Positions 40,289 through 41,885 are shown, counted from the stretch's first letter. The stretch is DNA of 64,000 nt from Amphiscolops sp. MND2022 (GCA_964187785.1 OZ076414.1:6324001-6388000); one strand, 5' to 3'. Made by a program: numbers and translations. Notes: generated from the letters alone by a model not told the origin.

Positions 40289-41885
40289 CTATTTAGGAGA
40301 ATGATAATCAATATTAATATCAAAAAATGCCATGTCACTTTCATAGTTTGAAATTTCATCGAAATAGAATCTAATTCCTCGATTATCTTCTGAAAAGGTT
40401 TCTTCTAAAAACACCCATCCACTAGTTTGTTCTTTTGCTGGAAAGATTACTTTATCTGCCCATTGATAATCTAAAGATTCATACTGTAACCTAAATCTAC
40501 ACATATTAATTCCTAATCTGTGATACCAAAATTTAATTCTTGTAATATTTGCATGATAGGAATATTTAGCAATCGCGTATCTATCAGGTCCGTAATTTGG
40601 ACTACTTGTTTCAATATAAGCATAATATTCTCCAATTGGTGGAAGAAAATCAGGACCAGTTTCACTTGAACTAGTACGACTATTAGAAGATTTGAAAAAT
40701 CCTGTTAAAGAATTCATTCCTGAAGAAATTTCTAAATCCCAATCTGTCCACAAATCTATACCACTATTATTTGTAAATATTGTCGTTATTTGAAGTTCGT
40801 AGAACACTCTTTTATCAACATATTCTTTAGTAGCAATTGGAAAAGAAACTTCGCCAATCATCGTATTAACGAGTATTGGAATCAAATCAGATGAACTTAA
40901 CAGTGTTATGTTTGGATCTTGTTTTAAACCTCCAGATTTAGAATCTACATATTGTTTAGTTGCTACTTCAAGTGGGTTCAGGGGATCGTTATTTATCTGG
41001 ATACTTTTTACGTTTATTAATTCATTATTGTTCATGCTGTTTTGTTTGTTATTTCGTAATATAGAAGTTTCGTCTAGTATAGTATCTACATAGATTTTAT
41101 TGGTTGCATCTTGGGGAGATATAGGATCATCGTTTATTTGAATACTTTTTATATTAGTTAAACTATAATTACTAAAGTCATTATTTTGGTTATTTTTTAC
41201 CAAATCGTTTGCTCATCATAAAATTCTAGTCCAACGTCTCGTCGTGTTCGTTCATTTTCTTGATGGAACGAATCAACATATGCTTTTGATACTAATTCAT
41301 TATCATTGACTGCTTGGGAAGTTACACTAAGACTTGAGACATTATATAAACTATGATTGTCGAAATCGTTATCTCTATCTCGTCTTACTAAATTTGTGTT
41401 TAATGGAATATATAAAATAGTTTTCGGAGTTGTTAAATTACTTTCCATTGTGATGAAATCTTTTCCAGCTAATTGTAATTTTTCATCTTTATGTAATCTT
41501 AACAATGAAATTCATCAATAGATTTATCTGTATATTGCTTTGTTGTTAATTCTAAATCATATTGAGGGTCTCTATTTACATAAACACTTTCTAATCCAGT
41601 AATAGTATTTCCATTGAAGTTGTTATTTTTATTATTTCTAACAATTGAATTGTTGTCTAATTCACTAATTGAGACTAACTTATTTGTTTTACTATCTACA
41701 TAAAATTTTGTAGCAGGATCTTGTAAATTTGTAGGATTTGGAAGGTTTTTTATTTTAAACTGATTTTTCATGTCTATATCTTCTTCCATAGATGATTCAA
41801 TATAGTTTGCTTTGACATAACTTTTCGTAACTCCTGTAGTGCTATTACTACTCCCAGAGATAGCTCTTCCAAATTTATCTGTCAT
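40289..41885 (-). pseudogene. Fibre/adhesin-like protein: KxYVD shaft repeats plus C-terminal MAM-like domain; split by two frameshifts
   Basis: Six repeats (ATKFYVD, TTKQYTD, VSKAYVD, TNKIYVD, ATKQYVD, ATKEYVD); head with TGP..GEYYAYIETSSP, FWYH..G and DMAFFDINI. Confidence 0.8.

What the first reader, a model, noticed from the sequence alone, without database searches (positions are those of the whole stretch)
40289..41885. Viral fibre tipped with a MAM-like domain
Seen: six KxYVD-type shaft repeats followed by ~140 aa matching MAM landmarks (T.S..TGP, G.YY.YIETS, FWYH..G, W, D.A..DI.I) but lacking the usual cysteines. Known: MAM is an adhesion domain of animal cell-surface proteins (meprin, neuropilin, RPTP-mu), and KxYVD repeats occur in trimeric fibres and adhesins. 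Inference: a host-derived adhesion module repurposed as a receptor-binding head, which implies an extracellular infectious stage.
Basis: partly seen in the sequence, partly recalled or inferred. Interest (0 to 1): 0.75.

Follow-up and report, generated by a model that had tools for sequence, protein, structure and literature searches.

The report
Polinton fibre gene with MAM head
A decayed copy of a virus-like Polinton/Maverick element carries a frameshifted gene for a phage-style fibre whose tip is a true relative of the MAM adhesion domain. The tip's closest outside kin sit on bacteriophage tail fibres, not on host (animal) proteins.

Summary
Window 40289-41885 (minus strand) is one gene split over three reading frames. 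It has six K-x-Y-V/T-D motifs (about 0.03 expected by chance) and a C-terminal ~170-residue beta-sandwich. Searched apart, the three pieces lie colinear on an intact 533-aa relative at 94-96% identity, so intact copies have a single gene. The head is a real MAM homologue. Profiles hit only MAM domains in the PDB (best E 1.9e-11). The head alone finds proteins made of 4-16 Pfam MAM domains. A confident model (pLDDT 95.7) matches MAM structures best (TM 0.59-0.66). The window's own sequence stays below Pfam's cut-off. The gene lies next to the double-jelly-roll capsid gene in a 16.5-kb Polinton (683-bp inverted ends, 6-bp target duplication) that has about ten broken genes. The 'host-derived' reading is not supported. 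The closest heads outside the family sit at the ends of tail-fibre-like proteins in tailed-phage contigs (47-84 bits per domain). Canonical cellular MAM domains, bacterial and animal, score 37 bits or less. Polinton, phage-type and cellular heads form three separate clades. Phage-like fibres with lectin-type tips are already described in Polinton-like viruses, so this is a new variant of a known kind. The host was not identified.

The parts
40289..41885 (-). Fibre gene, broken: it is read in three frames (two frame changes, no in-frame stop in the matched parts). Intact relatives encode one 533-aa protein.
   Evidence: The pieces, searched apart, are colinear on P0034 at 94-96% identity and cover 99% of it. 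tblastn gives three frames and 0 stops.
40292..40804 (-). C-terminal head domain (171 residues): a MAM-family beta-sandwich.
   Evidence: Pfam MAM E 0.053, 13.8 bits, below the cut-off of 26.4. Profile vs PDB hits only MAM domains, best 1.9e-11. phmmer of the head finds multi-MAM proteins. Model pLDDT 95.7, best fold matches are MAM with TMq 0.59-0.66.
41706..41885 (-). N-terminal ~60 residues: the most conserved part of the family, inferred to anchor the fibre to the virion.
   Evidence: Identity between the two deep clades is 49% here, against 33% for the shaft and 31% for the head. The anchoring role is inference.
40805..41705 (-). Shaft region with the six K-x-Y-V/T-D motifs, related to phage tail-fibre repeats.
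   Evidence: PHROG tail-fibre and head-decoration families are hit (phrog_2647 6e-9, phrog_2710 1.7e-6, phrog_11393 8.6e-6 for the intact relative P0014). PDB tail fibres gp9 and gp47 are hit weakly.
42438..43715 (-). Major capsid protein gene (double jelly roll), intact, 425 aa.
   Evidence: PF21738 8.4e-14. It is 92% identical to the MCP of L003, in one frame with no stop.
41998..42396 (-). Small gene between the capsid and fibre genes (134 aa in L003); broken by one stop. Function unknown.
   Evidence: Its position is conserved in L001, L002 and L003.
30942..47446 (-). Whole Polinton/Maverick element, 16,505 bp, about 30% GC in a 36-47% GC context. Its genes are on the minus strand.
   Evidence: Terminal inverted repeats and target-site duplication, composition, and gene-by-gene colinearity with L003.
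30942..31624 (.). Left terminal inverted repeat (~683 bp).
   Evidence: 90-99% complementary (98-99% over most of its length) to 46763-47446.
46763..47446 (.). Right terminal inverted repeat.
30936..30941 (.). Target-site duplication TGCGGT, left copy.
   Evidence: Read directly from the sequence.
47447..47452 (.). Target-site duplication TGCGGT, right copy.
   Evidence: Read directly from the sequence.
45819..46571 (-). A32-like packaging ATPase gene, broken (one frame change and one stop relative to L001).
   Evidence: Pox_A32 is on record for the homologues in L001 and L003.
36863..37720 (-). rve integrase gene, broken (one stop relative to L003).
   Evidence: PF00665 2.2e-11.
32394..35510 (-). 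[quoted passage not shown] It is also fragmented in L003.
   Evidence: PF03175 3.5e-9 and 8.8e-5.
37698..38375 (-). Endonuclease VII/HNH-like gene, intact.
   Evidence: phrog_1035 1.4e-8.
39131..39751 (-). 206-aa predicted membrane protein gene downstream of the fibre gene, intact.
   Evidence: 97% identical to its L003 homologue. Only weak SLATT_1-type hits.
31690..32307 (-). DUF4116 protein gene at the polymerase end of the element, intact.
   Evidence: PF13475 6.2e-22. Conserved in L003.

Best explanation
The region is a pseudogenised copy of the fibre gene of a Polinton/Maverick virus-like element. In intact sister copies the gene encodes one protein of about 440-535 aa (533 aa in the closest relative). 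That protein has a conserved N-terminal ~60 residues, a shaft of phage-tail-fibre-type units each ending in K-x-Y-V-D, and a C-terminal ~170-residue beta-sandwich head that is a divergent member of the MAM domain lineage. The gene sits in the capsid-morphogenesis block, two small genes at most after the double-jelly-roll capsid gene. The likely mechanism is inferred, not shown. The protein would trimerise like its phage relatives and attach by its N-terminus to the capsid vertex. Its MAM-type head would be presented outward as the cell-surface-binding tip. The head type is shared with tail-fibre-like proteins of tailed phages, so the fibre looks like a module of viral stock rather than a domain taken from the host. 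In this window the gene has two frame changes, and about ten genes of the element are broken. This copy therefore cannot make the fibre or a particle.
For: Shown. One gene in intact copies. Six motifs. Shaft homology to phage tail-fibre families. MAM homology of the head: profiles hit only MAM domains in the PDB; the head alone reaches proteins with 4-16 Pfam MAM domains; 8 of 18 family members touch Pfam MAM. Fold: pLDDT 95.7, and MAM domains give the highest TM-scores. Polinton identity of the element: DJR capsid, rve, pPolB, A32 ATPase, 683-bp TIRs and a 6-bp TSD. Conserved position after the capsid gene in three sister elements, including a deep branch. All 122 full-length family members held carry the head at the C-terminus. 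The conservation gradient runs N-terminus > shaft ~ head. dN/dS is 0.13-0.29 on the fibre pieces against the L003 copy, similar to the capsid gene at 0.25. Phage link. Inferred: trimer, vertex attachment and receptor binding.
Against: There is no direct evidence for a particle, for trimerisation or for any ligand. The monomer model leaves the shaft unfolded (pLDDT below 50), which fits an obligate trimer but does not prove one. No free viral genome with this fibre was found in IMG/VR. The window protein fails Pfam's MAM cut-off. The best PHROG hit of the shaft is annotated 'head decoration', not fibre. The tree of heads is unrooted, so the direction of any ancient transfer is open. The host is unidentified.
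Confidence: 0.72

Rival explanations
1. One reading: the head was captured from an animal host's MAM-domain gene and repurposed as the receptor-binding knob.
For: The head is a true MAM homologue, and by summed score the top non-family hits of the whole-library search are giant multi-MAM proteins. At least two of them are animal or eukaryotic genes: Patiria miniata, and a 30-Mb chromosome of an unnamed assembly.
Against: Those scores are sums over 5-23 domains. Per domain, cellular MAMs reach 37 bits or less, against 47-84 bits for phage-context heads. One of the two best cellular hits is bacterial, a T9SS-secreted enzyme. Polinton heads are monophyletic in 99 of 100 bootstraps and are not nested among cellular MAMs. 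The head is shared by both deep branches of the fibre family. The host is not even known to be an animal.
Confidence: 0.1
2. The head is a generic carbohydrate-binding jelly-roll (CBM4/6/29/61-like lectin), and the MAM likeness is only a matter of fold.
For: CBM families, the Fbs sugar-binding domain, Eph ligand-binding domains and phage tailspike tips appear among the MAM hits in both Foldseek searches. BFVD hits are phage tips annotated CenC/CBM-like.
Against: Sequence profiles hit only MAM domains and no CBM in the PDB. Pfam MAM is the only family hit repeatedly. Single-sequence phmmer reaches bona fide MAM arrays. MAM structures give the highest TM-scores, 0.59-0.66 against 0.41-0.53. A glycan ligand remains possible and is compatible with the best explanation.
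Confidence: 0.05
3. The protein is not a vertex fibre but has another role, for example a capsid decoration or cement protein, or a non-virion adhesin.
For: The best PHROG match of the shaft is a 'head decoration' family. No penton-binding motif or particle data exist.
Against: The other PHROG and PDB matches are tail fibres. The architecture is a conserved N-terminus, a shaft that varies by whole units, and a terminal head. The phage homologues of the head end tail-fibre-type proteins and lie among tail-fibre genes.
Confidence: 0.1
4. The two frame changes are assembly errors, and the gene is intact in the organism.
For: The fibre gene has no in-frame stop, only frame changes, and the sequence is very AT-rich.
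Against: Seven other genes of the same element (eight counting the polymerase) carry in-frame stops, which are substitutions rather than typical length errors. Frame changes occur in several further genes. Many relatives in other assemblies are truncated too.
Confidence: 0.12

Closest known systems
Bacteriophage-like fibre proteins of Polinton-like viruses and Polintons (cryptophyte and other protist PLVs, PMC12220804; oomycete Polintons, PMC10748475; 'Fiber' and 'Lectin' genes of MELD viruses, PMC8502044)
   Same: A modular, phage-tail-fibre-like shaft joined to a beta-sandwich binding domain, encoded in the morphogenesis block of a Polinton-type element. The presumed role is a trimeric host-recognition fibre on the penton.
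   Different: The reported tips are laminin_G_3, H_lectin, discoidin, collagen or endosialidase-chaperone domains, or beta-helix fibres. No paper in the searched library pairs a MAM domain with Polintons, PLVs, virophages or phage tail fibres. Here the carrier is a classical pPolB + rve Polinton with TIRs and a TSD.
MAM domain, Pfam PF00629 (meprin, neuropilin, RPTP-mu, enteropeptidase, MDGA1, insect SR-C)
   Same: Homologous by sequence profile and by fold. The shared landmarks include T-G-P, Y-x-E-T-S, F-x-Y-H-x-x-G, a central W and the D-x-A-x-x-[ND]-I-x-I end.
   Different: Only 16-18% identity to solved MAM structures and 21-32% to the best cellular domains. The window's score is below Pfam's cut-off. 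The head has one cysteine. It is the terminal head of a viral fibre rather than part of a cell-surface ectodomain.
C-terminal MAM-like heads of tail-fibre-type proteins in tailed-phage metagenome contigs (L004-L007, P0280 on a 228-kb contig, P0310)
   Same: These are the closest outside relatives of the head, at 31-36% identity and 47-84 bits. The head is likewise at the C-terminal end of a fibre-type protein among tail-fibre genes.
   Different: Their N-terminal parts are different: a TIG/IPT domain or a phrog_5073-type shaft, not the K-x-Y-V-D shaft. They form a separate clade (97 of 100 bootstraps). One of them passes Pfam's MAM cut-off at 32.7 bits, whereas the window's copy scores 13.8 bits and the best of the 18 scanned family members reaches only E 1.8e-4.
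Vertex fibres and spikes of other double-jelly-roll viruses (adenovirus fibre, PRD1 P5). The likeness rests on my own knowledge; no sequences were fetched or compared.
   Same: The functional analogy only: an N-terminal tail in the penton, a repetitive trimeric shaft and a distal receptor-binding knob.
   Different: No sequence or family hit to adenovirus-type fibre families came back in Pfam or the PDB with the window's pieces or their relatives. The knob fold is MAM-type.

Membership tests
MAM domain (Pfam PF00629) | Score at or above Pfam's gathering cut-off (26.4 bits) | tested here: not met
   The window head scores 13.8 bits, E 0.053. 8 of 18 family members match, best E 1.8e-4. No family member has a Pfam domain on record.
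MAM domain (Pfam PF00629) | Significant sequence homology to bona fide MAM domains | tested here: met
   Profile A5 against the PDB: MDGA1 1.9e-11, SR-C 3e-6, enteropeptidase 6.7e-6, neuropilin-1 9.4e-5, and nothing else significant. phmmer of the head hits proteins with 4-16 Pfam MAM domains.
MAM domain (Pfam PF00629) | MAM-type beta-sandwich (jelly-roll) fold | tested here: met
   Model pLDDT 95.7, pTM 0.90. The top Foldseek hits are enteropeptidase MAM and SR-C MAM (TMq 0.66), meprin beta (0.59) and neuropilin (0.51).
MAM domain (Pfam PF00629) | The conserved cysteines of canonical MAM domains (four, from my own knowledge of the family) | tested here: inconclusive
   The head has one cysteine. 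In the aligned part, however, no column reached 60% Cys even among the cellular MAM domains sampled, and the Pfam match omits the first ~40 profile positions.
Polinton/Maverick element | [quoted passage not shown] | tested here: met
   PF03175 and PF00665 hits. Both genes are broken in this copy.
Polinton/Maverick element | Double-jelly-roll major capsid protein and A32-like packaging ATPase | tested here: met
   PF21738 8.4e-14. The ATPase remnants are 96% identical to the L003 gene, which has Pox_A32 on record.
Polinton/Maverick element | Minor capsid (penton) protein and adenain-like protease | tested here: inconclusive
   Homologues of the 284-aa and 174-aa genes of L001 lie in the expected positions, but they hit no family.
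Polinton/Maverick element | Long terminal inverted repeats and a 5-6-bp target-site duplication | tested here: met
   683-bp TIRs, 90-99% complementary and 98-99% over most of their length. TGCGGT lies on both sides.
Phage tail-fibre-type shaft | Sequence match to tail-fibre families over the repeat region | tested here: met
   For the intact relative P0014: phrog_2710 1.7e-6, phrog_11393 8.6e-6, phrog_1640 2.3e-5, phrog_2647 6.2e-9. The window's N-terminal piece alone scores 4.9e-5 to 8e-4.
Phage tail-fibre-type shaft | Homotrimeric elongated assembly | not testable with these tools
   Only monomer prediction is available. The shaft is unfolded in the monomer model.
Adenovirus-type fibre | Sequence match to adenovirus fibre families | tested here: not met
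   No such family or chain was returned by Pfam or the PDB sequence searches. No adenovirus sequence was fetched.

The most novel reading that the evidence does not exclude
The MAM-type beta-sandwich is an old viral receptor-binding tip shared by tail fibres of tailed phages and vertex fibres of eukaryotic Polintons. On this reading a whole fibre module (K-x-Y-V-D shaft plus tip) crossed between the bacterial and eukaryotic virus worlds. The 'animal' MAM adhesion domain would then belong to the same bacterial/viral stock rather than being an animal invention.
Probability: 0.3. Interest if true: 0.7.

Novelty: new variant of a known kind. Interest (0 to 1): 0.5.

Why it matters
Whether Polintons/Mavericks are transposons or viruses with an infectious stage is a long-running question. 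A conserved attachment fibre under purifying selection, present in more than two thousand protein clusters, is the kind of gene only a particle that must find a cell would keep. That makes it useful descriptive evidence. It also gives Polinton annotation a fibre family that Pfam does not currently label. Finally, it shows that MAM-type domains, usually treated as animal adhesion modules, also tip the fibres of phages and of eukaryotic virus-like elements. This bears on where the domain came from and on gene flow between phage and eukaryotic virus lineages.

Tried and rejected
Host identification failed. Rfam and tRNA scans of the window were empty. The flanks hold only retroelement fragments. 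All relatives come from unnamed ENA assemblies, and the sample accessions are in no paper.

A single-sequence PDB search with the window piece found nothing; only profiles did.

The first metagenome scan with alignment A1 failed for lack of a conserved stretch, so it was repeated with A3.

IMG/VR held no Polinton-type fibre. It held only one 152-kb viral contig with canonical MAM domains inside a 1200-aa ORF.

The test of whole-unit repeat similarity was weak.

The cysteine-column comparison was uninformative.

I first labelled the canonical-MAM clade 'animal'. That was wrong for part of the set, because P0343 is bacterial. The clade is better called cellular canonical MAM, and most of its members were not traced to an organism.

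I did not check whether the frame changes lie in homopolymer runs, because that would point at the changes.

Full report
WHAT IS THERE. Window 40289-41885 holds three ORFs on the minus strand in three different frames. I searched them only apart. Together they carry six K-x-Y-[V/T]-D motifs (2+1+3). Shuffles of the same pieces give about 0.03. The 3'-most piece ends in a ~170-residue region (window 40292-40804) that Pfam's MAM model touches weakly: E 0.053, 13.8 bits, cut-off 26.4, profile positions 40-152 of 158.

ONE GENE IN INTACT COPIES. A word search with the 3'-most piece found 33 relatives, several of 409-497 aa. A profile of these found 2375 protein clusters at E <= 1e-3. All came from ENA assemblies and none carried a Pfam annotation. 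Among them were P0034 and P0035, both 533 aa. Each window piece, compared by itself, matches P0034 at 94-96% identity. The three matches are colinear and cover 99% of P0034. The window copy thus has two frame changes and no in-frame stop in the matched parts. I give counts only.

THE ELEMENT.
- The gene lies in an AT-rich block (about 30% GC).
- The block is bounded by ~683-bp terminal inverted repeats, 30942-31624 and 46763-47446, which are 90-99% complementary (98-99% over most of their length).
- It is flanked by a 6-bp duplication, TGCGGT.
- Inside, on the minus strand, are a double-jelly-roll capsid gene (intact, 425 aa), an rve integrase, a protein-primed PolB, A32-type ATPase remnants, an endonuclease VII/HNH-like gene and a DUF4116 gene.

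This is a classical Polinton/Maverick of 16,505 bp. It is colinear with a sister element in L003 at about 90% protein identity. A more distant sister is L001, and a deep-branch one is L002. In all three sisters the fibre gene follows the capsid gene after one or two small genes.

Measured against the sisters, the broken genes in the window copy are:
- the ATPase (one frame change, one stop);
- the 284-aa gene (one stop);
- a 58-aa gene (two stops);
- the 174-aa gene (one frame change);
- the small gene before the fibre (one stop);
- the fibre (two frame changes);
- a 76-aa gene (one stop);
- a 145-aa gene (one frame change, two stops);
- the integrase (one stop);
- the polymerase (several breaks).

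The capsid gene, the 206-aa membrane-protein gene, the endonuclease gene and the DUF4116 gene are intact.

THE SHAFT. The intact relative P0014 hits phage tail-fibre and head-decoration families: phrog_2647 6e-9, phrog_2710 1.7e-6, phrog_11393 8.6e-6. Profiles touch solved tail fibres gp9 and gp47 weakly. Family members fall into length classes of about 440, 490 and 530 aa and have 2-6 motifs, as expected if whole units are gained and lost. Direct similarity between the window's six units is weak. The N-terminal 60 residues are the best conserved part: 49% identity between the deep clades, against 33% for the shaft and 31% for the head. That is the usual pattern for a fibre with a fixed attachment end and a variable distal end.

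THE HEAD IS A MAM HOMOLOGUE.
- A profile of 18 family members hit only MAM domains in the PDB besides two weak tail-fibre matches: enteropeptidase 8.8e-5, MDGA1, SR-C and neuropilin.
- A broader profile (A5) gave MDGA1 1.9e-11, SR-C 3e-6, enteropeptidase 6.7e-6 and neuropilin-1 9.4e-5, with nothing else significant.
- The 171-residue head alone, searched against 1.84 billion representatives, found 280 proteins at E <= 1e-3. They include giants with 5-23 matched stretches, which Pfam scores as arrays of 4-16 MAM domains at up to 1971 bits.
- A first model of the 3'-most piece had a confident head and an unfolded shaft. A head-only model reached pLDDT 95.7 and pTM 0.90.
- Foldseek puts MAM domains first and with the highest TM-scores: enteropeptidase and SR-C 0.66, meprin beta 0.59, neuropilin 0.51. 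CBM, Fbs and Eph domains follow at 0.41-0.53.

WHERE THE HEAD COMES FROM. A scan of JGI metagenomes returned six loci whose products match the head at 29-35% identity. Their context is tailed phage. L006 has tail-fibre genes upstream (phrog_972, phrog_910, phrog_5073). L007 has a ClpP-type head-maturation protease (1e-45). P0280 lies on a 228-kb contig between tail-fibre genes. P0310 joins a phrog_5073 shaft to the head. One of these proteins passes Pfam's MAM cut-off at 32.7 bits.

Scored per domain against the window head:
- the close Polinton clade gives 180-360 bits;
- the phage-context heads give 47-84 bits;
- two short proteins give 85-97 bits: P0279 lies beside integrase and Endonuclease_7 genes of another Polinton, and P0270 lies on a long contig of the sample that also holds L002;
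- the far Polinton clade gives 48-57 bits;
- canonical cellular MAM domains give 37 bits or less.

Of the cellular hits I traced, P0267 is from the sea star Patiria miniata. P0264 is on a 30-Mb chromosome of an unnamed assembly. P0343 is bacterial: a nuclease with two MAM domains and a T9SS sorting tail.

A neighbour-joining tree of 44 domains gives three clades: Polinton, phage-type and cellular. Bootstraps are 99, 97 and 99 of 100. Mean identity to the window head is 51%, 33.5% and 26.3% respectively. The tree is unrooted, so it excludes a recent capture from any sampled cellular MAM gene but does not give the direction of ancient transfer.

IS THE FAMILY FUNCTIONAL. Between the window copy and the L003 copy, dN/dS is 0.14, 0.13 and 0.29 for the three fibre pieces computed apart. 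It is 0.37 for the head alone and 0.25 for the capsid gene. Most of the divergence therefore arose while the protein was under selection. This fits separate integrations of a replicating lineage. No free genome with this fibre was found in IMG/VR.

LITERATURE. Phage-like fibres with lectin-type tips are well described in Polinton-like viruses (PMC12220804). Tail-fibre-like proteins are reported in oomycete Polintons (PMC10748475) and in MELD viruses (PMC8502044). No paper in the searched library pairs a MAM domain with these elements or with phage tail fibres.

VERDICT. The fibre and MAM parts of the interpretation are supported and in fact strengthened. The host-capture part is not supported. 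This is a new variant of a known kind, seen here in a decayed copy.

Noticed in passing
window 7518-28490: A ~20.8-kb unit bounded by ~210-bp direct repeats (78-83% alike). Inside are a ~1994-bp tandem repeat of four copies (about 17.1-25.0 kb) and an rve integrase fragment on the minus strand. It looks like a giant decayed LTR-type retroelement. Its plus strand is strikingly G-rich and C-poor (about 250 G against 95 C per kb) over the whole 20 kb, which I cannot explain.
   Followed up: partly
window 37698-38375; L003 8837-9505: An endonuclease VII/HNH-like gene lies inside the Polinton. The sister element L003 has a second paralogue inserted between the capsid and fibre genes, which the window lacks. 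This suggests a homing-endonuclease-like gene that moves within these elements.
   Followed up: partly
window 32394-35510 vs L001 15251-18826: The 1191-aa polymerase of sister element L001 has no tblastn match in the window element, although the capsid and fibre modules are homologous. This looks like an exchange of the polymerase module between related Polintons, as reported for nematode Polintons in PMC10748475.
   Followed up: no
window 30078-30328: A 125-nt-arm palindrome (97% complementary, 1-nt spacer) lies about 600 bp outside the left end of the Polinton.
   Followed up: no
window 30951-31091 and 47296-47437: Each terminal inverted repeat carries its own internal 49-51-nt inverted repeat close to the tip, so each end could form a hairpin.
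   Followed up: no
window 669-2447 and 56156-57921: Retroelement fragments lie in both flanks (RT and RNase H on the left, rve and RT on the right). The Polinton sits in a repeat-rich region.
   Followed up: no
L018 4426-8028 (IMGVR_UViG_3300030090_007211, 152 kb): A 1200-aa ORF of a large viral contig holds at least two canonical MAM domains (PDB MAM hits down to 1.9e-11), so MAM domains occur in other viral genomes too.
   Followed up: partly
window 31690-32307: An intact DUF4116 protein gene lies at the polymerase end of the element and is conserved in L003. Its role is unknown.
   Followed up: no
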